Of a stretch of DNA of 64,000 nt, positions 1,058-62,051 are shown one piece after another. A program made the position numbers and the translations under genes. The notes below the pieces were generated by a model. The model worked only from the letters and a program-made list of their open reading frames with translations. It was not told where the DNA came from and did not search any database. The stretch spans positions 124,001-188,000 of IMG/VR virus record IMGVR_UViG_3300027985_000918, one strand, 5' to 3'. Position 1 is the stretch's first letter. Every line of letters begins with the position of its first letter.

Positions 1058-1083
1058 GTACCCGAAACTGGTGCTTCGTTACC
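1058..1083 (-). promoter_or_regulatory. Phage promoter motif (variant)
   Basis: GGTAAC-N14-GGGTAC. Confidence 0.55.
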
Positions 1084-1151
1084 AGCCACTCTACTCGCTC
1101 AAGCTCCAGTCCTAGCCTTCCACCAGTTCTCAAGATTTGGGTTGTAGGGCT

Positions 1152-1847
1152 TCATGGCTTGGGCTCCCCCAGCGGGATGACATGTTTCCAGCTCCGCTGA
1201 GTCTTCATGGCTTCCCGAGCCATCCGGTCCGCCTGAGTGTTCAGGAACGCCGGGGTATCCTCAGCCCCTCGATGTCCCTTGACCCACTGCACAATCAGCT
1301 TCAACTCAGCGTCTTCCACCAACTGGTAGCTCCGGTGCAGAAGGTCAAGGACCTGGATCTTCTTGGGGAGCTTGGATGCTCCCCCATTCCACCCATACAG
1401 CCTTGCCACATGTTGACTGTCTGTCTTCAGGACCAGGATGTTCGCTTTGCCCGTGTCGAAATTCGACACTGCTGTCCAAATGGCGGCAAACACGGCGGTC
1501 AGCTCAGCGTCGTTCGAGGATTTGACCCAAGGGGGGCACGGACCACACCGTAAGATTCGGGTGTTGCTGTCCCGTAGCCAGATTCCCCACCCCGCCCGGT
1601 GGGTGTCCGAATGCAGGCTGGCATCCGAATAGCCCGAGATAAAGACAGCACGATCCGGGTTGCGCTGTCGGTTGACCAGTTGGAGACGACGAACGTCTTC
1701 TGACGTGGGTTTCACAACACCCCTCCAGGTTGGGGGGTCGTTCGGCTCAGGCAAAGTGCGGAAAGTCTGGACTGTAGGAAGACCCCCCACTTCTTGTGGG
1801 TCCAAATCCTCCAGGATGTCTCCCCACATGTCTGTCACGATTTCCAA
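1152..1847 (-). CDS. rnhA: Ribonuclease HI-like protein
   Basis: YSDAS, NDAELTAV, KTDSQ, QWVKGH, NTQADRMA motifs (D-E-D-D plus His). Confidence 0.85.
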   Translation of the reverse strand: MEIVTDMWGDILEDLDPQEVGGLPTVQTFRTLPEPNDPPTWRGVVKPTSEDVRRLQLVNRQRNPDRAVFISGYSDASLHSDTHRAGWGIWLRDSNTRILRCGPCPPWVKSSNDAELTAVFAAIWTAVSNFDTGKANILVLKTDSQHVARLYGWNGGASKLPKKIQVLDLLHRSYQLVEDAELKLIVQWVKGHRGAEDTPAFLNTQADRMAREAMKTQRSWKHVIPLGEPKP

Positions 1848-1940
1848 GTCCTCCAGCCGGGCGTTGCTGGTGAGGCAACTCTCAGGCCCTTCTGGTTCGC
1901 TGAGGGGTCCGGTACAAGGGGTTTTTTGGCAGGCTGGCTA

Positions 1941-2327
1941 TCAGTACCCGAGATCGGCGATGATGCTGTTCATGTCGAGTCCGTACTTCTGACAGACAGC
2001 CTCGAACCGGGCTTCCGTTTCGGGACTCTCGAACAGCGCCACCATGTTGCGGAACATCTTGGTGGCCCTCTCGACAGCCTTGGGATCTACGTAGACCCGA
2101 GTGTTGCCGCAGAGGTAGGGTTCCTGGCCCTTGACCACCTCGGGATTGGGGACTTCGGCCACCAGATAGGCTCCGGGCAGCCCGTTTTGGGTTACGCTGA
2201 CCACCAGGAAGGGGCGTTCCTCCATGATGATCACGTCGCCGGGGAAGATGGCGTCCGTGTCCAGGAACTCTCGCATGGCATCGGGGCTGCCGAAGACCTG
2301 CAGCATCTTGGTGAAATCGACCGACAT
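1941..2327 (-). CDS. Hypothetical protein
   Basis: GGAGG RBS, promoter motif at 2366-2391. Confidence 0.7.
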   Translation of the reverse strand: MSVDFTKMLQVFGSPDAMREFLDTDAIFPGDVIIMEERPFLVVSVTQNGLPGAYLVAEVPNPEVVKGQEPYLCGNTRVYVDPKAVERATKMFRNMVALFESPETEARFEAVCQKYGLDMNSIIADLGY

Positions 2328-2365
2328 GGGACCTCCGTTTTGGTGCGCTCAAGGTTTCGTAACGC

Positions 2366-2391
2366 CTACCCGAAAAGGGGTAGGCGTTACC
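2366..2391 (-). promoter_or_regulatory. Phage promoter motif within a 13-bp inverted repeat
   Basis: GGTAAC-N14-GGGTAG. Confidence 0.75.
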
Positions 2392-2395
2392 TGGT

Positions 2396-2835: not shown

Positions 2836-2897
2836 AGCCCCAAGCTCCCTTGATCCTAAAGAGGATGTACTGAAGGGCACCCTCTAAGTTGCCCCAC

Positions 2898-2923
2898 CTA
2901 CTTGCTTCATCTCCGGTGTTACC
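2898..2923 (-). promoter_or_regulatory. Phage promoter motif
   Basis: GGTAAC-N14-AAGTAG. Confidence 0.75.
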
Positions 2924-6226: not shown

Positions 6227-7309
6227 TCACGCATTCTCTTGGGAGAGCTTGACGGCGGCGTACACGTCCGCCAAGGCCACGTCCTGCTCCCAGCCCGGAT
6301 CCCCCACACCACCCTTGGAGTGGTACAAGCTGACGGCCTGGTCACGAGTCAACTTGCCGATCTCGATACGGCGGGACAACCGTCCGGGACGTCGCATGGC
6401 TTCGTCGATCCGATCCAGCGGCTGGTTGGTCGAGCAGATCAGACGGATGTTCAGGGCCTCGCCCAGAAGCCCGTCCCCGATGTTCAAGGCCGAGGTGATC
6501 GAGGTCATCGAGACGGCCATCCGATCAGAGAGCATCTGGTCAGCATCCTCCAGAACCAGGATCATTGGCTCGTCGTCCTTGTTGGCCAAGAGCACGGGCA
6601 GCAGCTCGGGCTTGCCCATCTCTCCCACCATGTCCGGGGGGACCACCACGAACTGGCATTCCGGATTGTGGTGGATCAGCGCCCGAATCAGCCAGGTCTT
6701 CCCCGTCCCCGGAGGGCCATCCAGGATCGTGATGCGTCCGAAGGGGTCATCCCGGTTCAGCTCCTTGCAGACGAACTTGAAGGACTCGACCACTTCGGGA
6801 GTGTAGTTCTCCTCCACCAAGGGGGCGTCCACCCAAGCCAGCTTGCGGATCACGTATCCGTTGAACCCCCGCATGATGGCATGGATGTCGTTGCCAGGAT
6901 TTTCCTGGAATTCCTCGAACCGCACATGCTCTTCCTGCCATTCCGTCAGGATCCTGTCATTGTCCGGGTTCATCGTCAGGTACGAGACGGTGATCGGTTT
7001 GTCGTCGGCGCCGCCGCTGACCTGGAGAAACCCATCGGCCCACACCCAGACCTCATCGAAGTCCTTCTCGGAGTTGTCAATGACCGCATGCCCCCCGAAC
7101 GAGGCCAGGATGTCACGGAAGGCGTTCATCCCTTTGGGGACCTCCTGCATCCAGGTCCGGCCTCTCCCGGACCAGTACCTCTGCCGAATGGTCCTCCCGT
7201 GCTCCAGGGCATAAGCCATCAAGGCTCCCCGGAACAGGTCCGAATCCAGATCGATGGCCAGCCCAATGGCGGAGGGTGCAAGGTGATGAATCCAGGGGTA
7301 GGTCGGCAT
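6227..7309 (-). CDS. AAA+ ATPase
   Basis: GPPGTGKT, LVLEDAD, STNQ sensor 1, DEAMRRPGR arginine finger. Confidence 0.9.
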   Translation of the reverse strand: MPTYPWIHHLAPSAIGLAIDLDSDLFRGALMAYALEHGRTIRQRYWSGRGRTWMQEVPKGMNAFRDILASFGGHAVIDNSEKDFDEVWVWADGFLQVSGGADDKPITVSYLTMNPDNDRILTEWQEEHVRFEEFQENPGNDIHAIMRGFNGYVIRKLAWVDAPLVEENYTPEVVESFKFVCKELNRDDPFGRITILDGPPGTGKTWLIRALIHHNPECQFVVVPPDMVGEMGKPELLPVLLANKDDEPMILVLEDADQMLSDRMAVSMTSITSALNIGDGLLGEALNIRLICSTNQPLDRIDEAMRRPGRLSRRIEIGKLTRDQAVSLYHSKGGVGDPGWEQDVALADVYAAVKLSQENA

Positions 7310-7337: not shown

Positions 7338-7363
7338 CTACTCGAAAAGGGGATGGGGTTACC
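7338..7363 (-). promoter_or_regulatory. Phage promoter motif
   Basis: GGTAAC-N14-GAGTAG. Confidence 0.75.
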
Positions 7364-7373: not shown

Positions 7374-9425
7374 TTAGTTGGGCATGGGTTGTCCAAGAAC
7401 CTGGGTCCAGAAGTCGGAGAGGCCGATAACGGTGATGCTAGCCTTGCCCTCGGCGTTGAGCTGGCGGGCCTTGGTCGGCTTTCCCGATGTGGATGTGGGA
7501 TCGTCGCACACCAGGTAGTCGAGGCCCTTACCCACGCTGGACTTGAAGGTCCCTCCGAGCTGAGTCACGGCGTCCACCAGGTCCTTCTCCCGCTGCCCCC
7601 GGAACCCCGTAACGCAGAGGGTCTTGCCGGTGAGGGGGCCGACGATCTTCTTCTGGATGGTGACACCGTTGCCAAGGATCTTGGCGATCAGAGGCATCCG
7701 ATCCCAGAACCCCTGATAGAAGCTGGCGGCCTTCGTAGAGCCCACCCCCGGAATGGCGGCTACCTCTTGGGGGGTCATTTTCGCCATCTTGGAGAGGCTG
7801 TCGAAGCCCCCATCCACGATGGTCAGCGCCATGCTCCGGCCGATCAGGGGGATTCCGAGAGAGCCCACGAAGACGTCGAGAGGAAGGTTCTTGGTGGCGT
7901 GCAGGTTCTTGAATGCCTTGCCAGCCGTTCCACCCACCCTCACCCCGTTGGTGTACCGCAGGTCGGCAGCCTCGGCCGGGTCTACCTTGTACAGATCTGC
8001 GATGTCCTCCACCAGACCGGCGGAGATCAGGGCTTCGACCAGGGTGTCACCGAAGTGTAGGACCCCAATCTTCTTGATCCAGCGGGTGATCATGCCCTTG
8101 ATCTGAGCGGGGCAAGCGTCCCCGTTGCAGACTAGGTACTCACCATCCATGACCGTGGGGGACCCGCACTCAGGGCAGGTCTCGGGGGGCTCGAACACCT
8201 TGGCGTTGGGGTCCTGGGTATCCAGGAGGACCGTCTCGACAAAGGGGATCACGTCATTGCGCCGGCATACCAGAAGCCTATCCCCTGCAGCCAGGACCGA
8301 CTGACCCACAGCAGAGGCTAGGTCGTGGATGTTGCTGAGGTTGTGGAGGCTGGCCCGGCTCACAGTGGCCCCCGCTAGAAGAACCGGCTCGACGATGGCG
8401 ACAGGGGTAATCCGACCGGACTTACCGACCTGCCAGACGACCTCCTTGAGGGTAGTCTCCTTCTCCTCATGAGGGAACTTGAATGCGACGGCGCCCTTGG
8501 GGCCACGACCCTGGAGCCCCAGAGACTCCATCGTGGTGTCGTCGTCGAACTGGATGACGATGCCGTCGATGTCGTAGTCCAGCTTGGCCCGGAGGGTGTC
8601 TACGTAGAGTTGGTAGATGCTCTCGACTTCCGCCGTGGTCTTGACGACCTCATAGCGGGGGAGGATGAAGCCGGCCTTTTTGAGGGCGGCGAACTCGGCG
8701 CTTTTGCTCGGGAGGGGGCCGGAATCGGGAACCATCTGGAACATGACCACGGTCAGGTGCTTGCAGCCGTCGGCATCCGATTGGCGCTTCATTGTCCCAT
8801 TGGCCGTGTTCCGGGGATTGGACTGCCCAGGGAAGTACACATCGAAGTCATCGTGGGTGCAGATAACCTCGCCCCGGCAGAACCCCGTGAAGCTGGGAAA
8901 CACCTTGACCACGCCCTGCATGAGCTTGGCGTTGACAGTGATGTCCTCACCCGTCTCTCCATCCCCACGGGTGACCGCCTGGACGAACTGTCCGTTTTCA
9001 TAGCGGAAAGAGCAAGATGCTCCGTCCAGCTTGTCCATGACGATCAGGGGCTGGCCCCCTCGGTGTCCGCAGTCCTTCGCCCAACGGCGGAATTCTGGGA
9101 CTTCCTGGGCCTTGTTGAGTGAGCCCATTGGGATGCCGTGCTTGGTCTTCTGCCAGCCTGAGCTGACACTGGCTCCGATCTTGTTGAGCTGGGGATGGCT
9201 GGGGCTAATACGCCTCAGACCTTCGGTCAGCCCGTCGTAGTGGGCATCCGACATGAGGGGGTTGCCCCCGCCGTAGTAGGCGGAGTCCGCCCGGGACAGC
9301 AGATCAGCGACCTGAGCAGCGACCTGAGGCAACTCAGGATGGTTGGGAGGGGCTCCCAGCACAAGAGTTTCGAGCTGGGCATAGTCCCCCTGGGAGAGCA
9401 GGCTGGAGACTTGTTGGAGCATCAT
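7374..9425 (-). CDS. ligA: NAD-dependent DNA ligase with C-terminal BRCT
   Basis: YYGGGNPLMSDAHYD, KLDG, TRGDGETGEDIT, RGE, NPRNTANG, DIDGIVI, AFKF, Cys4 zinc finger, HhH, BRCT. Confidence 0.95.
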   Translation of the reverse strand: MMLQQVSSLLSQGDYAQLETLVLGAPPNHPELPQVAAQVADLLSRADSAYYGGGNPLMSDAHYDGLTEGLRRISPSHPQLNKIGASVSSGWQKTKHGIPMGSLNKAQEVPEFRRWAKDCGHRGGQPLIVMDKLDGASCSFRYENGQFVQAVTRGDGETGEDITVNAKLMQGVVKVFPSFTGFCRGEVICTHDDFDVYFPGQSNPRNTANGTMKRQSDADGCKHLTVVMFQMVPDSGPLPSKSAEFAALKKAGFILPRYEVVKTTAEVESIYQLYVDTLRAKLDYDIDGIVIQFDDDTTMESLGLQGRGPKGAVAFKFPHEEKETTLKEVVWQVGKSGRITPVAIVEPVLLAGATVSRASLHNLSNIHDLASAVGQSVLAAGDRLLVCRRNDVIPFVETVLLDTQDPNAKVFEPPETCPECGSPTVMDGEYLVCNGDACPAQIKGMITRWIKKIGVLHFGDTLVEALISAGLVEDIADLYKVDPAEAADLRYTNGVRVGGTAGKAFKNLHATKNLPLDVFVGSLGIPLIGRSMALTIVDGGFDSLSKMAKMTPQEVAAIPGVGSTKAASFYQGFWDRMPLIAKILGNGVTIQKKIVGPLTGKTLCVTGFRGQREKDLVDAVTQLGGTFKSSVGKGLDYLVCDDPTSTSGKPTKARQLNAEGKASITVIGLSDFWTQVLGQPMPN

Positions 9426-9463: not shown

Positions 9464-9489
9464 TTACTCGTCGGGGAGGGGGTGTTACC
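9464..9489 (-). promoter_or_regulatory. Phage promoter motif upstream of ligA
   Basis: GGTAAC-N14-GAGTAA. Confidence 0.7.
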
Positions 9490-9715: not shown

Positions 9716-10588
9716 CTATCGACGGAAGGCGGCGAACACAGCGACCGTGGAAAAGATGAGGAAGTCGTACAGGAAATGAACCACCACGGCAGAAATCAAA
9801 CCGTATGTTACCACCATCCAGAAGAAGAACATCCCCAGGAACCAGGAGTTGATCCTGCCGAACAACCCTTGATACTTGTGGCCGTCCTGGTAGGTGGCAT
9901 TGCTCATTAGGATACCGGCACCAACAGTCCAGGAATACGGGTGGAATAGGTACCCCTCCAGGAATCCTAACGTCATCCAGTTCGCCAGAGGCCCGGCGAT
10001 GGCTTCGTACAGGAACTGGTAGTCCAGGCCGAACACGAGGCACACCCCAGCAAACAGGCCGAGGGCGAGGCCAGCGATTTTGTGGGCCCTCTCTCCAACA
10101 AGTAGCAAGATGACGGCGATGCCTACGAAGAACCACATCAAGCCGATCCAGATGTAGAGGAGTACGAGAGACCCGGCAATTCCCAGAAGCCAACGGCACC
10201 AACGGTAGTACACCTCTTCGGTGACCCCTGCCCGCAGGGACACCAGGAATCCTTCTTGCAAGATCGCCCCGGCAGAAAGGCGACCACCCAACCTTTTGGC
10301 TAGGAGCCGTTCCAGGGATGTCTGCCGCCGGCTGAGGAGCCGGGACACCACGTTGGTCCCGATGCCCCAGGCGAACAGCCCCAGGGCAGCCAGAAGCCAG
10401 TCCACCAACTCGCCACGGGCGACCCAGAACATGGGGTCATACAGGTCGAAGGGGATCACGTCGGGCCACAGGGCCTCAATAATGAATACGAGGCCACAGA
10501 CCACTACGATCCGAAAGATCCAGTCGGCCCATGTACGGTTTTCCTTGTTCAGGCGTTGGAAGAGTCGCTTCACGTGGATTCGATTCAT
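9716..10588 (-). CDS. CPBP (CAAX protease/Abi)-family intramembrane metalloprotease-like protein
   Basis: Multiple hydrophobic helices; AGVTEEVYYR, GHKYQG and VVHFLYD motifs. Confidence 0.65.
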   Translation of the reverse strand: MNRIHVKRLFQRLNKENRTWADWIFRIVVVCGLVFIIEALWPDVIPFDLYDPMFWVARGELVDWLLAALGLFAWGIGTNVVSRLLSRRQTSLERLLAKRLGGRLSAGAILQEGFLVSLRAGVTEEVYYRWCRWLLGIAGSLVLLYIWIGLMWFFVGIAVILLLVGERAHKIAGLALGLFAGVCLVFGLDYQFLYEAIAGPLANWMTLGFLEGYLFHPYSWTVGAGILMSNATYQDGHKYQGLFGRINSWFLGMFFFWMVVTYGLISAVVVHFLYDFLIFSTVAVFAAFRR

Positions 10589-10614: not shown

Positions 10615-10640
10615 CTACCCGAGACTATCCGGGGGTTACC
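10615..10640 (-). promoter_or_regulatory. Phage promoter motif
   Basis: GGTAAC-N14-GGGTAG. Confidence 0.75.
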
Positions 10641-11050: not shown

Positions 11051-11335
11051 TCAACGGGCGGGGGATAGCCCCCACAGAGCCAGCTCTTCGGCCTCGTTCT
11101 CGGTCCACCATCGGTGGAACTCTTCCTTCTGCTGATCTTCGATCTCCCTCTCCAGGTCATCGGGGACCTTGCCGGCACCGTACACCCACTGCTCGGGACT
11201 GGCCGGTACGTGACCCATGGCGGCGCAGATGGCGAACTCAAACCGGGGCGGTTTGCTCCGACCCAGGGCGGTTTGAATCACGTAGTATTCGTGGCGAAGC
11301 CGGCGGTATTCGGTCCGGATCTTGATGTGGCTCAT
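11051..11335 (-). CDS. Hypothetical protein
   Basis: Promoter motif plus conserved GGAGGACACC leader. Confidence 0.65.
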   Translation of the reverse strand: MSHIKIRTEYRRLRHEYYVIQTALGRSKPPRFEFAICAAMGHVPASPEQWVYGAGKVPDDLEREIEDQQKEEFHRWWTENEAEELALWGLSPAR

Positions 11336-11359: not shown

Positions 11360-11385
11360 CTACTTGCAGCTCCCTTGCCGTTACC
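11360..11385 (-). promoter_or_regulatory. Phage promoter motif
   Basis: GGTAAC-N14-AAGTAG. Confidence 0.75.
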
Positions 11386-11566
11386 CAGAATCGACATCCT
11401 TTTCAGGGTGACGGTGCCAACCACATCGGAAAAGTTTTTCTGGGGTGGTGGTTGCCAATTTGTCGGCGGCCGAGGTAACGCTGGCCTCGGGGCAAGTAGG
11501 TGAGGCGAACGTATGAATCTGACGCTTGCACGACAGAAGCGGGGTTCCTTTGAACGCCCCTAGCAG

Positions 11567-11592
11567 GGTAACTCGGTATCCCTAGCGAGTAG
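11567..11592 (+). promoter_or_regulatory. Phage promoter motif
   Basis: GGTAAC-N14-GAGTAG. Confidence 0.75.
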
Positions 11593-11619: not shown

Positions 11620-12813
11620 ATGTCACGTTACAACGCCCACATTCCCCTGAACCGGAATGACCTGGAAGTGCTGTCCTGGTATGCCGCTTGGACCCCCGAG
11701 ATCCACCAGGCCGACTGGCCGTCCCGTCGGCAATGGCAGCCGGGGTTCCGCTACATGGAAGATCTCTCCAATCCGGGATGGGCCGGCCACAAGAACTCGA
11801 TCGAGAACTCTGAGGCCCTGGCTTCGGCTGGCCCCGTGCTGAATGGTGAGTCCCCTACGGGCAAACGAGTCATCGCCAGGAGCTACGTACTGCCTAAGCT
11901 CCTGGCCTACGGTCTTGTTGAGGGATGCCTGTCTCGTGCCTGTCGCCTCACCGCTCGGGGTCGTGCCGCCCTGCTTTTTCACGGGTGGCCCTGCCCGGAC
12001 GTGTTCGAGAGCCACTGCCCGGAGATCTTCGACGCCCATTCGTTGAAGCCGATCAAGGGGATCAACGTCCACATCGACATCCAGGATGAAACCATGGGCC
12101 GCATCGGGCCGGAGTACAAGATCGAGCACGGGAGGCCCCTGCCCGACAACAAGACCACCTGGGGCATCATGCTGACCGAATACCAGGAAGATGGGTATCG
12201 GGGAAGAGGGACTCTCACCGGGTCCACCGCAGGGCTTCGGGTGACCACCGGCAACGGTATGTACTTGAACGGTTCTTTGCGAGAGCACCGTCAGGTCCTC
12301 TCCCTGACCGTAAGCGATGCTTACGAGCGGCAGGTGCTGGATGTGGCCCTGAGCTTTGAGCAACTGGCGGACCTCCTGGTCTCCCAGGGTGATGTTCCCG
12401 TCACCCTCAACTACTTCGTCGGCAAGGACGGGATGGCCTACAGCCGCCCCGCCCCGCCCCCGGTGTCGGTGTCCCGTCGGATGCAAGAACGGATCTCCCG
12501 AGGGACCCAGGACCTGTTGAACCGGATCGCCCGGATCCGGACGGCGGTCGACGGCAAGATGGGCAAGAAGCTCCAGTCCGAAGTCACGGGGCTCCTGGAT
12601 CTCGTCGAACGGGATGCGAAGGGGCTCGGGTCTTTCTCTGCTGAGCAGGCCATGGAAGAGATGTCCGCCTTGGCCGAGTCCTTGATGACGGTAGTGGCCG
12701 ACAGGGCTTCCTTCACGGGCGGCGACGCCCCGGGACTGCTTCTGAGGTCCCCCGAGAATCCCAGGCCGGTCACCACCCCCCTTCTGATCGAAGGGGAGGT
12801 TATCGAGGACTGA
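11620..12813 (+). CDS. Hypothetical protein
   Basis: 397 aa, GAGG RBS, promoter motif at 11567-11592. Confidence 0.75.
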   Translation: MSRYNAHIPLNRNDLEVLSWYAAWTPEIHQADWPSRRQWQPGFRYMEDLSNPGWAGHKNSIENSEALASAGPVLNGESPTGKRVIARSYVLPKLLAYGLVEGCLSRACRLTARGRAALLFHGWPCPDVFESHCPEIFDAHSLKPIKGINVHIDIQDETMGRIGPEYKIEHGRPLPDNKTTWGIMLTEYQEDGYRGRGTLTGSTAGLRVTTGNGMYLNGSLREHRQVLSLTVSDAYERQVLDVALSFEQLADLLVSQGDVPVTLNYFVGKDGMAYSRPAPPPVSVSRRMQERISRGTQDLLNRIARIRTAVDGKMGKKLQSEVTGLLDLVERDAKGLGSFSAEQAMEEMSALAESLMTVVADRASFTGGDAPGLLLRSPENPRPVTTPLLIEGEVIED

Positions 12814-19101: not shown

Positions 19102-19127
19102 CTACCCTCCCGCTCAGAATCGTTACC
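19102..19127 (-). promoter_or_regulatory. Phage promoter motif upstream of pncC
   Basis: GGTAAC-N14-GGGTAG. Confidence 0.75.
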
Positions 19128-19716: not shown

Positions 19717-19864
19717 CGGGTATCTGTCCCTCTTTCTACTGGGGAGGGGCTTTTTCCGCCCCGTGTATCTACCGGGGTTACCCGAAATGCCTGGGTCCGT
19801 TACCAGGACGGTAGCGTCCCTATGCCCCTCCTGGAGTGCAAGCCTTAGCCTGGAGGTCACCCCG

Positions 19865-25180: not shown

Positions 25181-25206
25181 CTACCCGAGAAGCTGTTGCG
25201 GTTACC
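25181..25206 (-). promoter_or_regulatory. Phage promoter motif
   Basis: GGTAAC-N14-GGGTAG. Confidence 0.75.
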
Positions 25207-25788: not shown

Positions 25789-25814
25789 CTACTTACGTAG
25801 GCGAGGGTGTTACC
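25789..25814 (-). promoter_or_regulatory. Phage promoter motif
   Basis: GGTAAC-N14-AAGTAG. Confidence 0.75.
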
Positions 25815-27716: not shown

Positions 27717-27742
27717 CTACCCGATCTCAGCTCAGGGTTACC
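27717..27742 (-). promoter_or_regulatory. Phage promoter motif upstream of PARP
   Basis: GGTAAC-N14-GGGTAG. Confidence 0.75.
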
Positions 27743-28063: not shown

Positions 28064-28089
28064 CTACTCACCAGGTGAGGAAGGTTATC
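28064..28089 (-). promoter_or_regulatory. Phage promoter motif (variant)
   Basis: GATAAC-N14-GAGTAG. Confidence 0.65.
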
Positions 28090-28369: not shown

Positions 28370-28395
28370 CTACTTGCCAGGGAACCCGTGTTACC
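28370..28395 (-). promoter_or_regulatory. Phage promoter motif
   Basis: GGTAAC-N14-AAGTAG. Confidence 0.75.
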
Positions 28396-29712: not shown

Positions 29713-29881
29713 AGGGATTCTCCTTGTGGTTCGTTGTACCGTTTCTCGTCTCAGGAAAAGAGAAGCGGACGAACCGGAGGACCCCGGGGCCGTTGAACCT
29801 ACTCGTGGCGGAAAGCGTAACTCATGTTTAGAACCTATCCACGTTGGTGGGACGTGTCAAGCCCCCCCTGTCACACTAAAG

Positions 29882-29907
29882 CTACCCTATTCTCGGAAAT
29901 CGTTACC
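29882..29907 (-). promoter_or_regulatory. Phage promoter motif
   Basis: GGTAAC-N14-GGGTAG. Confidence 0.7.
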
Positions 29908-31659: not shown

Positions 31660-31685
31660 CTACCCGACCCCGGGTGATCGTTACC
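31660..31685 (-). promoter_or_regulatory. Phage promoter motif upstream of pspA
   Basis: GGTAAC-N14-GGGTAG. Confidence 0.75.
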
Positions 31686-34358: not shown

Positions 34359-34385
34359 CTACCCCAAAATAGATGTGCTGTTACC
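34359..34385 (-). promoter_or_regulatory. Phage promoter motif upstream of the TPM gene
   Basis: GGTAAC-N15-GGGTAG. Confidence 0.7.
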
Positions 34386-34402
34386 TACTTGACGGAACGC
34401 AG

Positions 34403-34477
34403 TGCGCCCGGGGGGACTCGAACCCCCGCATCACCAAGTTTTAGAGACTCGGGCTCTAACCTCTGAGCTACGGGCGC
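34403..34477 (-). tRNA. tRNA with anticodon CUA (amber suppressor type); CCA not encoded
   Basis: Acceptor GCGCCCG/CGGGCGC, D stem GCTC/GAGC, anticodon stem CGAGT/ACTTG with loop CT-CTA-AA (anticodon 34444-34442), T stem GGGGG/CCCCC with TTCGAGT, discriminator A. Confidence 0.9.
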
Positions 34478-34515: not shown

Positions 34516-34542
34516 CTACTTCGGCACCCTCCTGCTGTTACC
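34516..34542 (-). promoter_or_regulatory. Phage promoter motif upstream of tRNA(CUA)
   Basis: GGTAAC-N15-AAGTAG. Confidence 0.7.
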
Positions 34543-37845: not shown

Positions 37846-37871
37846 CTACTCATTCCAACACTGCTGTTACT
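37846..37871 (-). promoter_or_regulatory. Phage promoter motif (variant)
   Basis: AGTAAC-N14-GAGTAG. Confidence 0.65.
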
Positions 37872-38052: not shown

Positions 38053-38079
38053 GGTAACACCTTCCCCCCCCGCAAGTAG
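38053..38079 (+). promoter_or_regulatory. Phage promoter motif
   Basis: GGTAAC-N15-AAGTAG. Confidence 0.7.
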
Positions 38080-39524: not shown

Positions 39525-39550
39525 GGTAACCTGCCGTCCTCCCCGAGTAG
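39525..39550 (+). promoter_or_regulatory. Phage promoter motif heading the CYTH-MBL operon
   Basis: GGTAAC-N14-GAGTAG. Confidence 0.75.
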
Positions 39551-45659: not shown

Positions 45660-45686
45660 CTACCCGGGAATCCTACCCCCGTTACC
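45660..45686 (-). promoter_or_regulatory. Phage promoter motif upstream of ARH
   Basis: GGTAAC-N15-GGGTAG. Confidence 0.7.
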
Positions 45687-49447: not shown

Positions 49448-49473
49448 CTACCCGTTTTGGGTAGCTCGTTACC
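49448..49473 (-). promoter_or_regulatory. Phage promoter motif upstream of coaD-coaE
   Basis: GGTAAC-N14-GGGTAG. Confidence 0.75.
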
Positions 49474-51567: not shown

Positions 51568-53478
51568 CTACAAGGGCTCGAACGTGACCCTCAGACCCTG
51601 GGCCGCAGCCATCTTGATGAGGTCGAGAGGGTTGAGGCTGGTCGTCTGGGGCTGCCTCTCCTGTGTACCCTGAAGAGTGTCCAGGGTCTTCTGGAGGATG
51701 TCCAGGCGGGTGTTCAGGCGGGTGCTCATGCTGGAGAGATCCATCCCCACCCCCACCGTCTTATTGGAAGACAGCCCCGAAATGGAAACCTCGATGGCCT
51801 TCAGTTGATCGCCCACCTCGGACATGAGCACTTCGGGGGTCAGATCCTCGGAGTTGAGGGCCTGCACCTTCTGGTTGATGTTGCGGAGCCAGGTTCGGAT
51901 GTCCGTGGCGATGTTGCGGGAGGCCTCCACCTGATCGGAGACCTGCTTGATCACCGCCGCCGAGTGACGGCTGTGGATGTCCGCCAAAGACTCGTGGGCC
52001 CCCTTCATCTCCGAGGACACCACCCGGACGATTGCATCCGTGAGGGGGGTCAGGGCGGATTGGATGGTCTCGACCAGCTTGTCTCCATACTCCAGGAGCC
52101 CGGAGCGCTGGGACTTGAGCACCCCCTCGGTGACCAGATCGGCCATCACCGAGGACAGCTCCAGCATCCGCCCCTCGACGATACGGGTCACGGCCTCGAC
52201 GAACGACTCCCCCAGGTCAGGGATCTCCGGATCGGGGACATCCTGTTCCTCGATGGTGGGCTTTTCCTCGGGCTCCGGGGAGACATCCTTCGCAGGCACC
52301 CTTTCACTCAGCTCAGCCAGCAGAGCGACCTCCTCCGGATCCGGCTCACTCGGGGCCGGAAGCTGGAACTGGCGTGAGGGCATATCCGGGGGCAGCATCT
52401 GCTTCTTGGCCTTCTCCGAGGCGAGCGCCTGGACGTACTCGTCGATAGCGGCGGTGGATGTCCACCAACGCCTTCCCGCCAAGAACCCCTTAACCAGGCC
52501 GTTCTCAAGCAGATACTTGAGATCTCCGGGACAGGATACCTCCAGAGCCTTGCAGATCTTCCCCAGGTAGAACTGGAGCTGGTTGTGGGGGGAGACCTCA
52601 CGAGCCCAGTCCCCCAACACTTCCATCCTGCCTTGCACCACGTACTCGTGGGAGATGTGGCGCCCGAACACCTCGATCCCCATCCTCTTGATGTAGGTGC
52701 TCCCAGGGTACTCTCCGGTCCCCTCCTTCCATTCCTGCCAGATTCGGCGGGCCCAGCGGCGGACCGCCTTCTTGCGGACCTCGATGTTGCTCTCCCACTC
52801 CTCTCGGAGCGCTTTGACCTCCATCTGCACCAACTCCCCCAATGTCTCCGGCCAGTGGCACTCTCCCGAAGGCTTCGACAGCTCCTTCACTTGGGCTACG
52901 AGTTCGTTGGCGGACTCCGGGGTGGTGAGAGCCGGAGAATCCTCCACGAGGGCCCGGGCGGCCGACCGGATAGTATTCCCGTCGACAACGGGGGGCATCG
53001 GGGCGGTCCTCCCAAGCTGAAACCAACGACCCAACTCGTTCTGAGAGATCTTGGTGTTGGGGCCGAACTGGGCTCGCAGAAGCCCCCGGATCTCTCCTGG
53101 GCTGGGATCCCTTCCGGCCTTCCTCTGATCCTTGATGTAGTCGACAGCCGTGGTCTGTTTGTCACTGCTGCTGGGCTGCTTCCCCGACTTGCTGGGAGGG
53201 ATGAGCCCCTCGGCTCGCAACACCGGCTCGGCTTTGGCCCAACGACGAGAGACCCTCAGCACTTTGGCCCCTACCCGAGCGGCGGCGGAGTCCAGGTTGT
53301 TGGTGTTCAAGTCGGAGCAGGCGTCACCCAACAGCACGACCACGTCAGTTTGGGAAGGGATGTCCTTGACCGCTTGACGTAGATCGAAATGCTCCAGGAT
53401 CACGTTGTGCTCTCGAAGAGCTGCCATGTAGGCCTGGTTGGCGAAGATGGCCTCTCCGCCGACAACGGTGATGTTCAT
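51568..53478 (-). CDS. Large hypothetical protein with C-terminal coiled coil
   Basis: GGAGG RBS, promoter motif at 53514-53540. Confidence 0.7.
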   Translation of the reverse strand: MNITVVGGEAIFANQAYMAALREHNVILEHFDLRQAVKDIPSQTDVVVLLGDACSDLNTNNLDSAAARVGAKVLRVSRRWAKAEPVLRAEGLIPPSKSGKQPSSSDKQTTAVDYIKDQRKAGRDPSPGEIRGLLRAQFGPNTKISQNELGRWFQLGRTAPMPPVVDGNTIRSAARALVEDSPALTTPESANELVAQVKELSKPSGECHWPETLGELVQMEVKALREEWESNIEVRKKAVRRWARRIWQEWKEGTGEYPGSTYIKRMGIEVFGRHISHEYVVQGRMEVLGDWAREVSPHNQLQFYLGKICKALEVSCPGDLKYLLENGLVKGFLAGRRWWTSTAAIDEYVQALASEKAKKQMLPPDMPSRQFQLPAPSEPDPEEVALLAELSERVPAKDVSPEPEEKPTIEEQDVPDPEIPDLGESFVEAVTRIVEGRMLELSSVMADLVTEGVLKSQRSGLLEYGDKLVETIQSALTPLTDAIVRVVSSEMKGAHESLADIHSRHSAAVIKQVSDQVEASRNIATDIRTWLRNINQKVQALNSEDLTPEVLMSEVGDQLKAIEVSISGLSSNKTVGVGMDLSSMSTRLNTRLDILQKTLDTLQGTQERQPQTTSLNPLDLIKMAAAQGLRVTFEPL

Positions 53479-53513: not shown

Positions 53514-53540
53514 CTACCCTTTTTGGGCCGAGATGTTACC
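53514..53540 (-). promoter_or_regulatory. Phage promoter motif
   Basis: GGTAAC-N15-GGGTAG. Confidence 0.7.
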
Positions 53541-58200: not shown

Positions 58201-58255
58201 CCTGATCCTCCGGGCAAAGTCTTCACCTCTGCCCGGTTATAGGAGGGAAAACGGC

Positions 58256-59044: not shown

Positions 59045-59179
59045 CGGCTTGGTCCCTTAAGCTCGAAAGTTTCCGTCTTGGCTCTCAGCCTCTACCCTAC
59101 CAGCCGAGCCGCAGCACCCCCTGGGCCAGCTCGAAACTTTGCACCCCCGAAACTTCGGGGTCAAATGTGAAACTTTCCA

Positions 59180-59205
59180 GGTAACCCCAGGCTCCAGGAA
59201 AGTAG
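59180..59205 (+). promoter_or_regulatory. Phage promoter motif
   Basis: GGTAAC-N14-AAGTAG. Confidence 0.75.
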
Positions 59206-59228
59206 GTGGGCGAACAACGGAGGACCCC

Positions 59229-59621
59229 ATGCTGAGCAGAACCGAAATCGAAGCCCTCATGACCGAGAAGTCCATCCTGGCCGAGAAGGCCCAGCTCTCC
59301 AATGTGGATCTCGACCGCTTGGGCGAAATCCATCTGGTGCTGGACTCCCTCCCCGAGCTGACGATGGACATGCTTGGTCTTCTGAACCAAGACCTCTGCG
59401 ACGTGGAGGTTGATGTGGAGGAGGACGACGACGAGTTCACCGAAGCGGAGCCGAAGATCTCGGTCCAGGTGACAGACGGCGTGCTCACCTCGGTCTGGAT
59501 GGGCTACGCCGATGCCCCCCCGTGGGTCCAGGACATGGTGGACCGCCAATTCGAGGCGGAGTATGAGGTCACCGCCGAGGCCCGCTCCGAGCGCCAGCAG
59601 CTCTACGGGGGGCACTACTAG
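59229..59621 (+). CDS. Acidic hypothetical protein
   Basis: Promoter motif plus conserved leader; TAG-TAA double stop. Confidence 0.7.
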   Translation: MLSRTEIEALMTEKSILAEKAQLSNVDLDRLGEIHLVLDSLPELTMDMLGLLNQDLCDVEVDVEEDDDEFTEAEPKISVQVTDGVLTSVWMGYADAPPWVQDMVDRQFEAEYEVTAEARSERQQLYGGHY

Positions 59622-59691
59622 TAACGTCTGCCAAATCGAGGGGGGGGGGTCACCCCCAGCAATGGCGGGCCACCCTCAAAAAGGTGCTGAG

Positions 59692-60591
59692 ATGACTCGA
59701 TTCGTCTCTGTCCGAGTTCCCGCTTCAGGTACCCCCACTCTGCTCGACCTAGATGTTCCCGAAGACATCTTCGTGTCCCCGGGAGACCTAACGGGGACCT
59801 TCGGTGTTCCTGCGGATACGAGCTGTTCATGGGATCCCGATTCTGCGGAGGATGTGGGACCCCAACCAGCTCGGAGGTCATCCGGGTATCTAAAAGGTCA
59901 CCTCGACACTTCGGAGGACCTCTTGAAGAAATCCCTACTTGATGAAAAGCTCCTTGCCTTCTGCGACCTGGAGACCACTGGACTGCACCCCGACATCAAC
60001 GAGATCATCTCGATCGCCGGGCAGAAGTACACCCGTGCAGGTGAGCTGGTTGAGGAGATCGAGTTCAAAATCCAGTTCAACCACATCACCGAACCTCCCC
60101 CCTATGCGGGAGCCGTCTGGCCTGGCCCGAAACCTTTCTCCGTCGAGGACTGGAAGGAGGGTGTGGACTTCGCCCTCAAGCTGAACGGCTACCGGGAAGA
60201 GGACTGGGAGAACGCCATCCCCCTTCGGGAAGCCATCAAGCGGATCATGACGTTCCTGAATGGCTGCGTGATTGTGGGGCACAACCCACACTTCGACCGG
60301 GAGTTCATCGCCACGAAGGCCAAGCGCCTCGGGTTCAAGGACAAGCTCCCTTACCACAAGATCGACACCGTCACCCTGGCCTACGAGCACCTGGCCCCCC
60401 TCGGTTTGGGGTACCTGTCCCTGTCGAGACCGGGAGGGGTCTGCGACTTCTTGGGCATCCCCATCACCCAGGCTCATGAGGCCCTAGACGACGTGAGGCG
60501 GACCGCTCAGGCGTTCTTCAAGATGGACCGGGCAACATGGGCCCAGCGGCTCTGGTGGGCACTCCGGTGGAACATGAAGCACCGCCAGTAG
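59692..60591 (+). CDS. DEDDh 3'-5' exonuclease (DnaQ/Pol III epsilon-like)
   Basis: CDLETTG, VGHNPHFD, IDT, AHEALDD. Confidence 0.9.
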   Translation: MTRFVSVRVPASGTPTLLDLDVPEDIFVSPGDLTGTFGVPADTSCSWDPDSAEDVGPQPARRSSGYLKGHLDTSEDLLKKSLLDEKLLAFCDLETTGLHPDINEIISIAGQKYTRAGELVEEIEFKIQFNHITEPPPYAGAVWPGPKPFSVEDWKEGVDFALKLNGYREEDWENAIPLREAIKRIMTFLNGCVIVGHNPHFDREFIATKAKRLGFKDKLPYHKIDTVTLAYEHLAPLGLGYLSLSRPGGVCDFLGIPITQAHEALDDVRRTAQAFFKMDRATWAQRLWWALRWNMKHRQ

Positions 60592-60611
60592 ATGCCAAAA
60601 AGAACAAACTC

Positions 60612-62030
60612 ATGACTGATCTGCTTCCATACACCACTATTTCCGCTGTTGTCTCCAACCGGAATGCCGCCGTCTCCAAAGCCCGAGAGGCTGCTGATAT
60701 GATTGCAGCAGGACTCCTATTGGCAGAGGAGGCTCAAACCCTGGCCCAACAAGCTCACGGGGCGACTACGTTCACACTGGCCGATCATTCCCGCCGAGAG
60801 GCTTACCAGAAGCTATTCCAGTCTTTCGACGCTGACCAATCTGTGGAGTGTTTCCGCCAGCAGACCGACGCCCGCACATGGATGAACCTTATCACCCTAA
60901 CGGGTATGAACGCCCTCATGGACAAAACCGCCAAAGATGAACTCTATGCGGGGCTGTGCGGGGCTGTCCCCGAAATCACCGAGGACAACATCGAGGCCAC
61001 GTTTTTGCACCTAGTGGGAGACGCCAAACTCATCTTCCAACGGGGGCTGGCACGAGCCTTCAGCGGCCTGGACCGCCGGTTCAAGAGCCACGGCGCCTTC
61101 AAGTTGGGATCCCGGATCATCCTAACCAACGTCTTCGACGACTGGGGAGGGTGGAACTACCACACCCGCATGGAAGACACCATGGCCGACATCGAACGGG
61201 TGTTCGCCGTGCTGGACGGCAACAAGATTCCGGACCCGGGAGCCCTCACCCGAGCCATCCGGAAAGACCGCCAGGGTGGCTGGTACCCCCGACAGTCCGT
61301 TACGGAGACCCCTTACTTCCGAGTGATGTGCTACAAGAACGGCAATGCCCACTTGTGGTTCCAGCGGGACGACCTGGTCGAGAAAGCCAATCAGGTCCTG
61401 GCGGAATACTATGGCGAGGTGCTTCCTGACGGCGTACCCGACGACATGCCGGTCTCTGATATCAAGACCAAGTCGGGTGCCTTGTGCAAAGACCTGGCGT
61501 TCTACCCGACCCCTGACGCTGTCGTGAACACCATCCTTAGCCAGAGCGGCGTTTTCCTGACCGATGACTCTGTAATCCTGGAGCCTTCGGCAGGTACGGG
61601 GAACCTCGTGCGGGGCGTCCTGTCCAAGAACATACGTCGAGTGGATGCTGTCGAAATTCATCCGGACCGTGTGCGGGCTCTGAAGGCCATTGATGACCCA
61701 CGGCTAAACGTCTTGGAGGCGAATTTCCTGCGGATGGGGGCCCGCCAGGATTACACCCACGTCTTCATGAACCCTCCCTTCTACGGCACCCACTGGATGG
61801 AGCACGTCACCCACGCTTTTGATTTCCTGGTTCCCGGGGGAACCCTCGTTGCTATTCTCCCCATCTCTGCCGAATTGGGGACATCAACGAAACACCAGAC
61901 GTTTCGTAAGTGGGCGGCCGCCCATACTGGATGGGATGACCTTCGATTCACAGATCTCCCTGCCGAATCGTTCAAGGATTCCGGCACCCGAGTCAACACC
62001 GTGTTCTTGGTTCTCCACAAAAAAAGGTAA
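60612..62030 (+). CDS. DUF4942-like domain plus N6-adenine DNA methyltransferase
   Basis: FYPTP, ILEPSAGTG, NPPF; N-terminal YKNGNAHL. Confidence 0.85.
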   Translation: MTDLLPYTTISAVVSNRNAAVSKAREAADMIAAGLLLAEEAQTLAQQAHGATTFTLADHSRREAYQKLFQSFDADQSVECFRQQTDARTWMNLITLTGMNALMDKTAKDELYAGLCGAVPEITEDNIEATFLHLVGDAKLIFQRGLARAFSGLDRRFKSHGAFKLGSRIILTNVFDDWGGWNYHTRMEDTMADIERVFAVLDGNKIPDPGALTRAIRKDRQGGWYPRQSVTETPYFRVMCYKNGNAHLWFQRDDLVEKANQVLAEYYGEVLPDGVPDDMPVSDIKTKSGALCKDLAFYPTPDAVVNTILSQSGVFLTDDSVILEPSAGTGNLVRGVLSKNIRRVDAVEIHPDRVRALKAIDDPRLNVLEANFLRMGARQDYTHVFMNPPFYGTHWMEHVTHAFDFLVPGGTLVAILPISAELGTSTKHQTFRKWAAAHTGWDDLRFTDLPAESFKDSGTRVNTVFLVLHKKR

Positions 62031-62051
62031 TCCCAACGCATATGTAAGTAG
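62026..62051 (+). promoter_or_regulatory. Phage promoter motif (variant)
   Basis: GGTAAT-N14-AAGTAG. Confidence 0.65.

What the first reader, a model, noticed from the sequence alone, without database searches (positions are those of the whole stretch)
1058..62051. A 26-copy ECF-sigma-like promoter, GGTAAC-N14/15-RRGTAG, defines a phage regulon
Seen: 26 copies (21 with N14, 5 with N15; 5 carry one mismatch), all in sense orientation shortly upstream of starts on both strands, including ligA, pncC, PARP, pspA, ARH, coaDE and the tRNA. Known: ECF sigma promoters have -35 elements ending in AAC and a short -10 box 16-17 nt away, matching GTAAC-N16/17-GTAG. Inference: recognised by a phage-encoded (outside this window) or hijacked host ECF sigma. 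It could also help predict the host.
Basis: partly seen in the sequence, partly recalled or inferred. Interest (0 to 1): 0.75.

Follow-up and report, generated by a model that had tools for sequence, protein, structure and literature searches.

The report
Phage sigma-factor promoter regulon
A 402-kb uncultivated phage from a hydrothermal vent carries about 100 copies of one two-part promoter, which is most likely read by the phage's own ECF-like sigma factor; related huge phages share its -10 box but each has a different -35 box.

Summary
GGTAAC-N14/15-RRGTAG occurs 22 times exactly in the window, against 0.02 expected. Six more one-mismatch copies lie in promoter positions. The whole 402,383-bp phage record holds 68 exact copies. 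Of these, 66 lie in the 8.4% of the genome that is non-coding, and 55 lie within 200 nt upstream of a same-strand start. The others precede tRNA arrays, sit in an ORF-free promoter array, or lie antisense inside a sigma gene. A pyrimidine-purine step 7/8 nt after GTAG, and three genes that start exactly 7 nt after it, mark the likely transcription start.

The genome encodes sigma-70-family proteins outside the window. SigmaA (genome 85015-86136, minus strand) folds like ECF sigmas, and sigmaC is a second candidate. No phage RNA polymerase was found.

Related huge phages keep GTAG but use other -35 boxes: 119 copies of CTTACTT-N14-GTAG in one and 31 copies of GATCATCT-N14-GTAG in another. SigmaA's DNA-reading helix is identical wherever GGTAAC is used and differs elsewhere. 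A host sigma is therefore unlikely.

The sigmaA-versus-sigmaC assignment and the transcription start sites are inferred, because no RNA data were listed. This is a new member of a known kind: a phage sigma/promoter regulon.

The parts
1058..1083 (-). promoter copy, one mismatch (GGGTAC), 26 nt before gene 387-1031
2366..2391 (-). exact promoter copy (N14), 38 nt before gene 1941-2327
2898..2923 (-). exact copy (N14), 62 nt before gene 2500-2835
7338..7363 (-). exact copy (N14), 28 nt before AAA ATPase gene 6227-7309
9464..9489 (-). one-mismatch copy (GAGTAA), 38 nt before NAD-dependent DNA ligase 7374-9425
10615..10640 (-). exact copy (N14), 26 nt before gene 9716-10588
11360..11385 (-). exact copy (N14), 24 nt before gene 11051-11335; divergent from the next two copies
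11474..11499 (+). exact copy (N14), the distal of two tandem promoters for gene 11620-12813 (120 nt before it)
11567..11592 (+). exact copy (N14), 27 nt before gene 11620-12813
19102..19127 (-). exact copy (N14); the CinA/PncC gene 18534-19094 starts exactly 7 nt after GTAG (candidate leaderless mRNA)
19778..19804 (-). one-mismatch copy (N15, GGGTAA), 61 nt before gene 19123-19716
25181..25206 (-). exact copy (N14), 20 nt before gene 24282-25160
25789..25814 (-). exact copy (N14), 35 nt before gene 25202-25753
27717..27742 (-). exact copy (N14), 33 nt before PARP-domain gene 25854-27683
28064..28089 (-). one-mismatch copy (GATAAC), 23 nt before gene 27738-28040
28370..28395 (-). exact copy (N14), 24 nt before gene 28085-28345
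29882..29907 (-). exact copy (N14), followed by a sigma-70-like promoter and then gene 29278-29712 (169 nt)
29832..29860 (-). sigma-70-like promoter TTGACA-N17-TAGGTT (a second promoter class) in tandem behind the copy at 29882-29907
31660..31685 (-). exact copy (N14), 60 nt before PspA-family gene 30811-31599
34359..34385 (-). exact copy (N15), 40 nt before the 873-aa gene 31697-34318
34516..34542 (-). exact copy (N15), 38 nt before tRNA(CTA)
34402..34477 (-). tRNA with anticodon CTA (amber-suppressor type), driven by the copy at 34516-34542
37846..37871 (-). one-mismatch copy (AGTAAC), 31 nt before Rho_N-domain gene 37575-37814
38053..38079 (+). exact copy (N15), 30 nt before gene 38110-38532
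39525..39550 (+). exact copy (N14), 84 nt before my call 39635-39823; an ATG with a Shine-Dalgarno sequence lies about 24 nt after GTAG
45660..45686 (-). exact copy (N15), 32 nt before ADP-ribosylglycohydrolase gene 44722-45627
49448..49473 (-). exact copy (N14), 26 nt before CoaD-CoaE fusion gene 48207-49421
53514..53540 (-). exact copy (N15), 35 nt before the 636-aa gene 51568-53478
59180..59205 (+). exact copy (N14), 23 nt before gene 59229-59621; preceded by four CGAAACTTT-type repeats at 59067-59170
62026..62051 (+). one-mismatch copy (GGTAAT), 24 nt before gene 62076-62330

Best explanation
The motif is the main early/middle promoter class of a 402-kb phage (IMG/VR record, direct terminal repeats, hydrothermal-vent metagenome). 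Host RNA polymerase core carries a phage-encoded two-domain, ECF-like sigma factor. This is most likely sigmaA (373 aa, genome 85015-86136, minus strand, outside the window).

In this model the sigma-4 domain reads GGTAAC at about -33 to -28. The sigma-2 domain reads (C)RRGTAG at about -14 to -8. Transcription starts at the purine 8 nt after GTAG.

Most transcripts then carry a 15-30-nt leader with a GGAGG ribosome-binding site, and a few appear leaderless. About 100 such promoters (68 exact) drive DNA-metabolism, NAD/ADP-ribose, CoA and stress genes, many unknown genes, and tRNA genes. Sixty-two of the 68 exact copies lie in the first 200 kb.

The sigma genes themselves sit behind sigma-70-like promoters, so the host holoenzyme would start the cascade. 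A third motif, GCCTATAG, marks candidate late promoters.

What is shown: the motif statistics, placement and orientation, the sigma folds, and the clade-wide pattern of promoters and sigma helices. What is inferred: which sigma reads the motif, the start site, and the timing.
For: - **Motif statistics and placement.** There are 22 copies in the window against 0.02 expected. Genome-wide there are 68, against 0 for the reversed control. Sixty-six of the 68 are intergenic where 8.4% of the genome is non-coding, with a typical gap of 20-70 nt to a same-strand start. Fifty-five of the 68 have a sense start within 200 nt.
- **Start-site signature.** A Y-R step at offsets 6/7 after GTAG occurs in 45 of 68 sites, against 7-27 at other offsets. 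Three genes start exactly 7 nt after GTAG.
- **No phage RNA polymerase found.** Pfam searches for RNA polymerase beta, beta-prime and T7-type enzymes gave no match in the genome.
- **SigmaA is an ECF-like sigma.** It gives weak Sigma70_r2, r4 and Sigma70_ECF matches. A family profile hits the solved sigma-H structure 3mzy at E = 4.7e-7. The best Foldseek matches of the AF2 model (ranks 1-10) are ECF sigmas (Mtb SigH, E. coli SigE) plus one integrative sigma-beta model, with probability 0.96-1.0; SigL and SigW follow lower in the list.
- **Relatives keep -10 GTAG but change -35.** GGTAAC is used in L023, L092 and L093, where sigmaA is 63-71% identical. Other boxes are TTTTAGTT (L025), CTTACTT (G001) and GATCATCT (G002). 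Each motif is abundant only in its own genome: 119, 31 and 68 copies, against 0-1 in the other genomes.
- **SigmaA co-varies with the -35 box.** The recognition helix VSRASVSRGLTYLR is identical in the four sigmaA orthologs from contigs shown to use GGTAAC, and in a fifth close ortholog (P0005) whose promoters were not examined. It differs in the phages with other boxes. The sigma-2 region KSSFGHYVHMV is nearly invariant across the clade, as GTAG is.
- **The sigmaA family is essentially phage-only.** It has at least 597 metagenomic homologs but was found on only 4 small MAG contigs among 185,579 species genomes.
- **Published ECF16 promoters have the same -35 and spacing** (PMC3420878).
Against: - No transcript data exist for this phage. 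Only DNA runs were listed, and no RNA run was listed. Start sites and timing are therefore inferred.
- SigmaC is also a sigma-70-family protein and is present in all the relatives examined. Its recognition helix also varies between phages.
- In the L023/L098 phage, sigmaC has a copy of this promoter upstream of it. That arrangement would fit classical ECF positive autoregulation by sigmaC.
- SigmaA has no sense copy of the motif upstream, only antisense copies inside the gene. No anti-sigma partner was seen next to it.
- SigmaA does not reach Pfam's curated thresholds for the sigma domains.
- Gene calls come from a home-made caller.
- A highly diverged phage RNA polymerase could escape the Pfam models.
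Confidence: 0.65

Rival explanations
1. The motif is the same kind of promoter, but the cognate sigma is sigmaC (507 aa, genome 394592-396115, plus strand). SigmaC would be an immediate-early gene transcribed from a canonical TTGACT-N16-TAnnnT promoter. SigmaA would then serve another promoter class.
For: - SigmaC has a sigma-2 plus sigma-4 core. The AF2 model has pLDDT 86, and its fold matches are primary and ECF sigmas.
- It is conserved in relatives G001-G005.
- In seven phages or contigs (G000, G001, G003, G005, L098, L099, L100) it sits behind a canonical sigma-70-like promoter, so it would be made first.
- In L098 a class-2 promoter precedes sigmaC, which looks like ECF-type autoregulation.
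- The antisense class-2 promoters inside sigmaA could be a switch that turns sigmaA off.
Against: - The sigmaC recognition helix differs at 2 of 14 positions between G000 and the L023/L098 phage. One of these is the position equivalent to sigma-70 R584. Both phages use GGTAAC.
- The sigmaA helix is invariant across the GGTAAC group at similar overall divergence.
- The sigmaC sigma-2 region is more variable than that of sigmaA, although GTAG is invariant.
- The best fold matches of sigmaC are primary sigmas rather than ECF sigmas.
Confidence: 0.2
2. A host sigma factor reads the motif, either an ECF sigma or an unusual primary sigma. The phage would then simply mimic host promoters.
For: The motif has ECF-like geometry, and its GTAAC -35 box is identical to the ECF16 consensus. 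The host is unknown, so its sigma repertoire cannot be checked.
Against: - Related phages of similar G+C content each use a different -35 box at regulon scale.
- The changes track a phage-encoded sigma helix.
- Canonical TTGACA-N17-TAnnnT promoters also occur in the phage and are conserved in front of sigmaC across the clade. This suggests the host primary sigma is conventional.
- The phage carries two or three sigma-like genes of its own.
Confidence: 0.07
3. The motif is read by an undetected phage-encoded RNA polymerase, or it is a transcription-factor operator or processing signal rather than a sigma promoter.
For: Jumbo phages of other groups encode highly diverged RNA polymerases that standard models miss (PMC7824862). 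About half of the open reading frames here have no Pfam match.
Against: - No match to RNA polymerase beta, beta-prime or T7-type models was found.
- A two-box layout with a 16/17-nt unconserved spacer is typical of sigma holoenzymes. It is unlike single-subunit polymerase promoters, and unlike dyad operators.
- The strict sense orientation, the fixed distance to starts and the Y-R step fit initiation.
Confidence: 0.06

Closest known systems
ECF (group 4) sigma promoters, especially ECF group 16 / Bradyrhizobium EcfF (tGTAACc-N16-CGAA; GTAAC(g,a)-N14-15-(c,t)CG(t,a); PMC3420878)
   Same: Both are two-part promoters with a GTAAC -35 box and a 16-17-nt gap to a short -10 box. The start lies a few nt downstream of the -10 box (6 bp in EcfF, a predicted 7-8 nt here). 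The candidate sigma has only sigma-2 and sigma-4 domains, and its fold matches are ECF sigmas.
   Different: - The -10 box is GTAG, extended to CRRGTAG, not CGT/CGAA.
- The regulon has about 100 promoters in a virus, rather than a handful of stress genes.
- No anti-sigma gene lies next to the sigma gene.
- No sense autoregulatory promoter is present upstream of sigmaA.
- SigmaA has a structured N-terminal extension of about 180 aa.
- Relatives lack the AAC in their -35 boxes (CTTAC, ATCAT, TTTAG).
Phage sigma phiEco32 gp36 and its middle/late promoters (AATGTA centred at -11.5; PMC12276001)
   Same: Both are phage-encoded, distant two-domain sigma homologs that redirect host RNA polymerase core to a private promoter class. 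With the start site inferred here, G-11 T-10 A-9 would be shared. The gp36 complex 9m7y appears among the fold matches of sigmaA, at rank 50.
   Different: The consensus quoted for gp36 promoters is only the -10-region AATGTA, and gp36 works with the co-factor gp79. Here a strong -35 box is present, and no gp79-like factor was looked for. Sequence similarity was not demonstrated.
Temporal sigma cascades of large phages (Bacillus SPO1 gp28 and gp33/34; T4 gp55 late sigma). The details are from general knowledge; SPO1 is mentioned in PMC13401047 and jumbo phage sigma factors in PMC7824862.
   Same: Host sigma-70-type promoters precede the phage sigma genes, a phage-specific promoter class drives early/middle functions, and a separate short motif (GCCTATAG) sits in the structural-gene half. 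This resembles an early-to-middle-to-late programme.
   Different: The sigma families are unrelated at the sequence level, the promoter sequences differ, and timing has not been measured here.
Orthogonal ECF sigma/promoter pairs used in synthetic biology
   Same: Related sigmas have divergent sigma-4 helices matched to divergent -35 boxes. The promoters do not cross-occur between genomes.
   Different: Here the pairs occur naturally in one clade of huge phages and share a single -10 box. Orthogonality is inferred from motif counts, not measured.

Membership tests
Sigma-dependent bacterial-type promoter | Two conserved boxes separated by an unconserved spacer of nearly fixed length | tested here: met
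   GGTAAC and (C)RRGTAG carry 1.7-2.3 bits per position, while the spacer carries no more than 0.3 bits (0.5 at the C that precedes RR). The spacer is 14 or 15 nt before RR.
Sigma-dependent bacterial-type promoter | Located upstream of genes in sense orientation, and rare inside genes | tested here: met
   Sixty-six of 68 copies are intergenic where 8.4% of the genome is non-coding. Fifty-five of 68 have a same-strand start within 200 nt. The rest precede tRNAs or lie in an ORF-free array.
Sigma-dependent bacterial-type promoter | Transcription starts a few nt downstream of the -10 box | not testable with these tools
   No RNA run was listed. The indirect evidence is a Y-R step at offsets 6/7 in 45 of 68 sites, and three genes starting 7 nt after GTAG.
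ECF (group 4) sigma promoter | -35 box containing AAC | tested here: met
   GGTAAC in G000, L023, L092 and L093 is identical to the ECF16 GTAAC. The feature is not met in relatives G001 (CTTACTT), G002 (GATCATCT) and L025 (TTTTAGTT).
ECF (group 4) sigma promoter | -10 box with the CGT/GTC core | tested here: not met
   The -10 box is GTAG, preceded by C-R-R. There is no CGT.
ECF (group 4) sigma promoter | 16-17 nt between the -35 AAC and the -10 core | tested here: met
   GTAAC-N16-GTAG occurs in 45 sites and N17 in 23 sites.
ECF sigma factor (for candidate sigmaA) | Sigma-70 family with sigma-2 and sigma-4 only, without regions 1.1 and 3 | tested here: met
   The AF2 model is confident for residues 183-373. 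The best Foldseek matches (ranks 1-10) are ECF sigmas plus one integrative sigma-beta model. A family profile hits 3mzy at E = 4.7e-7. Pfam matches are below or at threshold: Sigma70_ECF scores 21.0 against a cut-off of 21.1, and r2 scores 12.9-15.9 bits.
ECF sigma factor (for candidate sigmaA) | Co-transcribed anti-sigma factor | tested here: inconclusive
   The neighbouring genes are on the opposite strand or have no recognisable anti-sigma domain. Only inspected by eye; no dedicated search was made.
ECF sigma factor (for candidate sigmaA) | Positive autoregulation from its own promoter type | tested here: not met
   No sense copy of the motif lies within 400 nt upstream of sigmaA. Antisense copies lie inside the gene in four phages instead.
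Phage temporal sigma cascade | Phage sigma gene behind a host-type promoter, and a phage promoter class confined to a gene set | tested here: met
   SigmaC sits behind TTGACT-N16-TAnnnT in seven phages or contigs (G000, G001, G003, G005, L098, L099, L100). SigmaA sits behind TTGnnn-N17-TAnnnn sites. Sixty-two of 68 motif copies lie in the first 200 kb. Timing itself is not testable here.

The most novel reading that the evidence does not exclude
A widespread clade of huge phages (200-620 kb; at least 597 sigmaA homologs in metagenomes) runs most of its early/middle transcription through a phage-only family of ECF-like sigmas. The -10 specificity (GTAG) is fixed across the clade. The -35 specificity has diversified into private, mutually exclusive codes: GGTAAC, GCTTAC, GATCAT, TTTTAG. 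This would be a natural set of orthogonal sigma/promoter pairs. It could insulate each phage's programme from the host and from co-infecting relatives. A conserved antisense copy of the promoter inside the sigma gene would act as built-in negative feedback.
Probability: 0.45. Interest if true: 0.7.

Novelty: new member of a known kind. Interest (0 to 1): 0.55.

Why it matters
- **Annotation.** The motif gives a transcription map, with promoters, likely start sites and transcription units, for an uncultivated 402-kb phage. About half of the genes checked behind it have no Pfam match.
- **A testable hypothesis.** It links a phage-only sigma family, common in huge phages, to a defined promoter class.
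- **A recognition code.** The clade-wide pattern of one shared -10 box and private -35 boxes matched to sigma-4 helices is a natural recognition code. It could be mined for orthogonal expression parts.
- **Phage biology.** The same pattern could help explain how huge phages keep control of host RNA polymerase.
- **Limit.** The motif did not help to identify the host.

Tried and rejected
- **Complex prediction.** Complex prediction with the sigma-4 domains of sigmaA and sigmaC plus a -35 duplex was counted but not folded, so it is no evidence either way.
- **Motif search in IMG/VR.** Searching for the motif plus the conserved leader found only the phage itself. A single-protein search with sigmaA also found only the phage itself.
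- **RNA evidence.** Only DNA runs hold the sequence, and none was listed for kind rna.
- **Presence or absence of sigmaC.** It could not separate the two sigma candidates, because sigmaC is present in all five relatives examined.
- **Further sigmaC contigs.** L099 and L100, taken to compare the sigmaC helix with the local promoter type, had too few intergenic regions.
- **Host inference.** Searching for the sigmaA family in 185,579 species genomes gave only four small, probably mis-binned MAG contigs.
- **Metagenome loci as handles.** They are not held for whole-record scans.
- **Alternative genetic code.** TAG recoding, suggested by the tRNA(CTA), was considered. ORF statistics and stop-codon usage (TGA 249, TAG 80, TAA 76) fit the standard code, so it was not pursued.
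- **First de novo motif count.** The first two-part word count was swamped by tandem protein repeats and was redone anchored on GTAG.

Full report
**Source of the window.** The window is bases 124001-188000 of a 402,383-bp IMG/VR virus record (IMGVR_UViG_3300028422_000919). The record has direct terminal repeats and about 60% G+C. DNA runs labelled hydrothermal vent metagenome hold it completely. ORF statistics and stop-codon usage fit the standard code. I called genes with a simple codon-usage and ribosome-binding-site scorer trained on the genome itself. This gave 405 genes and 91.6% coding. All statements about 'intergenic' and 'distance to start' rest on these calls.

- The exact pattern GGTAACN{14,15}RRGTAG occurs 22 times in the window, against 0.02 expected from shuffles.
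- With one mismatch there are eight more. Six are intergenic, in sense orientation and just upstream of a start.
- In the whole genome there are 68 exact copies (36 on the plus strand, 32 on the minus strand). The reversed control pattern gives none.
- About 30 more one-mismatch intergenic copies exist genome-wide.
- Sixty-six of the 68 exact copies lie in the 8.4% of the genome that is non-coding.
- The gap from GTAG to the next same-strand start is mostly 20-70 nt, and a GGAGG-type ribosome-binding site lies in between.
- Fifty-five of the 68 have such a start within 200 nt.
- The other 13 fall into three groups. Some precede tRNA arrays. Some lie in an ORF-free 126-bp tandem array at 82.2-82.7 kb or near it. 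One lies antisense inside a sigma gene.
- Sixty-two of the 68 lie in the first 200 kb.

They are NAD-dependent DNA ligase, CinA/PncC, a PARP-domain protein, PspA, ADP-ribosylglycohydrolase, a CoaD-CoaE fusion and a tRNA with anticodon CTA. There are also an AAA ATPase, a Rho_N-domain protein and many proteins without a Pfam match.

**Anatomy of the motif.**
- An information profile extends the -10 box to C-R-R-G-T-A-G. The C is present in 48 of 68 sites.
- The profile shows a slight preference for A before GGTAAC. The spacer is unconserved.
- Seven and eight nt after GTAG there is a pyrimidine-purine step in 45 of 68 sites, against 7-27 at neighbouring offsets.
- Three genes start exactly 7 nt after GTAG: window 19102-19127 for CinA/PncC, genome 62326, and a one-mismatch copy at 26294.
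- No gene starts between 8 and 19 nt after GTAG.
- These points fit a transcription start at the eighth nucleotide. That would place GTAG at -11 to -8 and GGTAAC at -33 to -28, with a few leaderless messages. This is inference, because no RNA run was listed.

**Who reads the motif: candidates in the genome.**
- No RNA polymerase beta, beta-prime or T7-type domain was found in the genome.
- Three sigma-like ORFs were found, all outside the window.
- SigmaA (85015-86136, minus strand, 373 aa) has weak Sigma70_r2, r4 and Sigma70_ECF matches.
- Its family has at least 597 members in metagenomes, several of which JGI names 'sigma24 family'.
- A family profile hits the solved sigma-H structure 3mzy at E = 4.7e-7.
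- The AF2 model of sigmaA is confident for residues 183-373. Its best Foldseek matches (ranks 1-10) are ECF sigmas, Mtb SigH and E. coli SigE, plus one integrative sigma-beta model. SigL and SigW follow lower in the list.
- SigmaC (394592-396115, plus strand, 507 aa) has a conserved 230-aa core. The core folds as sigma-2 plus sigma-4, and its best matches are primary sigmas, sigma-32 and ECF sigmas.
- SigmaB (364554-365162, minus strand, 202 aa) has two region-4-type helix-turn-helix motifs. By eye, it sits beside a KOW-like gene and a clamp-loader-like gene in the structural half of the genome.

**Comparative evidence from related phages.**
- SigmaA homologs lead to many huge-phage records of 188-619 kb.
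- In three contigs whose sigmaA is 63-71% identical (L023, L092, L093), the same GGTAAC-N16-GTAG promoter is abundant.
- In more distant relatives the -10 GTAG stays at the same distance, but the -35 box is different. It is GTTTTAGTT in L025, GCTTACTT in G001 and GGATCATCT in G002.
- Whole-record counts show that each code is private to its genome. CTTACTT-N14-GTAG occurs 119 times in G001 and 0 times in G000 and G002. GATCATCT-N14-GTAG occurs 31 times in G002 and once each in G000 and G001. The G000 motif occurs 0-1 times in G001-G005.
- The sigma-4 recognition helix of sigmaA, VSRASVSRGLTYLR, is identical in the four orthologs from contigs shown to use GGTAAC. It is also identical in a fifth close ortholog, P0005, whose promoters were not examined.
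- This holds although the proteins are only 60-71% identical overall. The helix is different in every phage with another -35 box.
- The sigma-2 segment KSSFGHYVHMV...SNYHRK is almost invariant across the clade, as GTAG is.
- This co-variation argues against a host sigma and favours sigmaA.

**SigmaC cannot be excluded.**
- It is present in all the relatives examined.
- Its helix also varies between phages.
- In L098, which comes from the same sample as L023, a class-2 promoter precedes it.
- Against sigmaC, two of 14 helix positions differ between G000 and that phage, although both use GGTAAC.
- I put sigmaA at roughly 0.6-0.65 and sigmaC at 0.2.

**The wider transcription programme.**
- A second promoter class, TTGAC-N16-18-TAnnnT, has 13 copies, 7 of them intergenic. 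One lies in the window at 29832-29860, minus strand.
- This class precedes sigmaC in G000, G001, G003, G005, L098, L099 and L100.
- SigmaA genes sit behind TTGnnn-N17-TAnnnn sites that lack the -7 T.
- A third motif, GCCTATAG, has 16 copies of its CCTATAG core, 13 of them intergenic. Most lie about 40 nt upstream of starts between 168 and 337 kb. It also occurs in relatives.
- Together these suggest a cascade from host sigma to phage sigma(s) to the class-2 regulon to late genes. The timing is untested.

**Comparison with known systems.**
- The -35 box and spacing equal the published ECF16/EcfF consensus, GTAAC-N14-16-CG(A/T) (PMC3420878). The -10 box is not the ECF CGT.
- Other ECF hallmarks are missing. 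No anti-sigma neighbour was seen, and sigmaA has no sense autoregulatory promoter.
- The phage sigma gp36 of phiEco32 reads AATGTA centred at -11.5 (PMC12276001). This is a parallel for a phage two-domain sigma that reads a GTA core.
- Jumbo-phage reviews note phage-encoded sigma factors (PMC7824862; PMC7162821). My searches found no description of this sigma family or of this promoter.
- I therefore file the finding as a new member of a known kind, a phage sigma/promoter regulon. The clade-wide private -35 codes are the most novel aspect.

Noticed in passing
G000 85744-85769 (+), inside the sigmaA gene 85015-86136 (-); also L023 about 9837 (-), L092 about 2671 (-), L093 about 724 (-): An antisense copy of the promoter lies inside the sigmaA gene, at codons 89-123. 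This falls in or beside the poorly conserved, low-confidence linker. It is present in all four phages that use GGTAAC. G000 has a second, one-mismatch copy at codon 148. It could give antisense RNA or transcriptional interference against sigmaA.
   Followed up: partly
window 34402-34477 (-): A tRNA with anticodon CTA, which ARAGORN labels 'Pyl' and which is an amber-suppressor type, has its own promoter copy. TAG is nevertheless an ordinary stop in 80 of the 405 called genes. Which genes, if any, are read through is unknown.
   Followed up: partly
window 29832-29860 (-); G000 8797, 30811-30840, 45494, 48554, 70615, 394465: A second promoter class is sigma-70-like, TTGAC-N16-18-TAnnnT. Several copies sit in tandem just downstream of a class-2 copy and a short hairpin, for example before tRNA arrays. 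One precedes sigmaC, and this arrangement is conserved in seven related phages or contigs.
   Followed up: partly
window 44700-44709 and 58237-58243; G000 236089, 252865, 259132, 294346, 322851, 328890, 336571: The short motif GCCTATAG has 16 copies of its CCTATAG core, 13 of them intergenic. It lies about 40 nt upstream of starts, mostly in the structural-gene half, and relatives have it too. It is a candidate late promoter, reminiscent of single-box T4 late promoters.
   Followed up: partly
G000 82.2-82.7 kb (L018 13464-13921), and more widely 79.5-83.4 kb: A 126-bp tandem array of 3.6 copies carries class-2 promoters on both strands facing each other across a G+C-rich hairpin. It has no ORFs and no Rfam match. 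It may be a small-RNA factory or a sigma sink.
   Followed up: partly
window 59067-59170; G000 83266-83328, 83514-83591, 84571-84662, 86172-86343, 392516-392624; also upstream of sigmaA in L023: Clusters of CGAAACTTT / AAAGTTTCG repeats surround the sigmaA locus and a few other promoters. They are probably binding sites for an unidentified regulator.
   Followed up: partly
G000 364554-365162 (-): A third sigma-like protein of 202 aa has two region-4-type HTH motifs (Sigma70_r4_2, 40.5 bits). By eye, it lies next to a KOW-like gene and a clamp-loader-like gene. It may be a late transcription factor.
   Followed up: partly
G000 86948-88226 and L018 1-9000: A long series of genes is built from 69-bp (23-aa) repeats (consensus W..G..HREDGPA), forming a large paralogous family next to the sigmaA locus.
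   Followed up: no
G000 397039-402111 (-): A 1690-aa helicase-like protein seems, by eye, to carry an intein-like insertion with LAGLIDADG-type features. In relative L098, Pfam hits on record include Intein_splicing and LAGLIDADG_3 in a ribonucleotide reductase.
   Followed up: no
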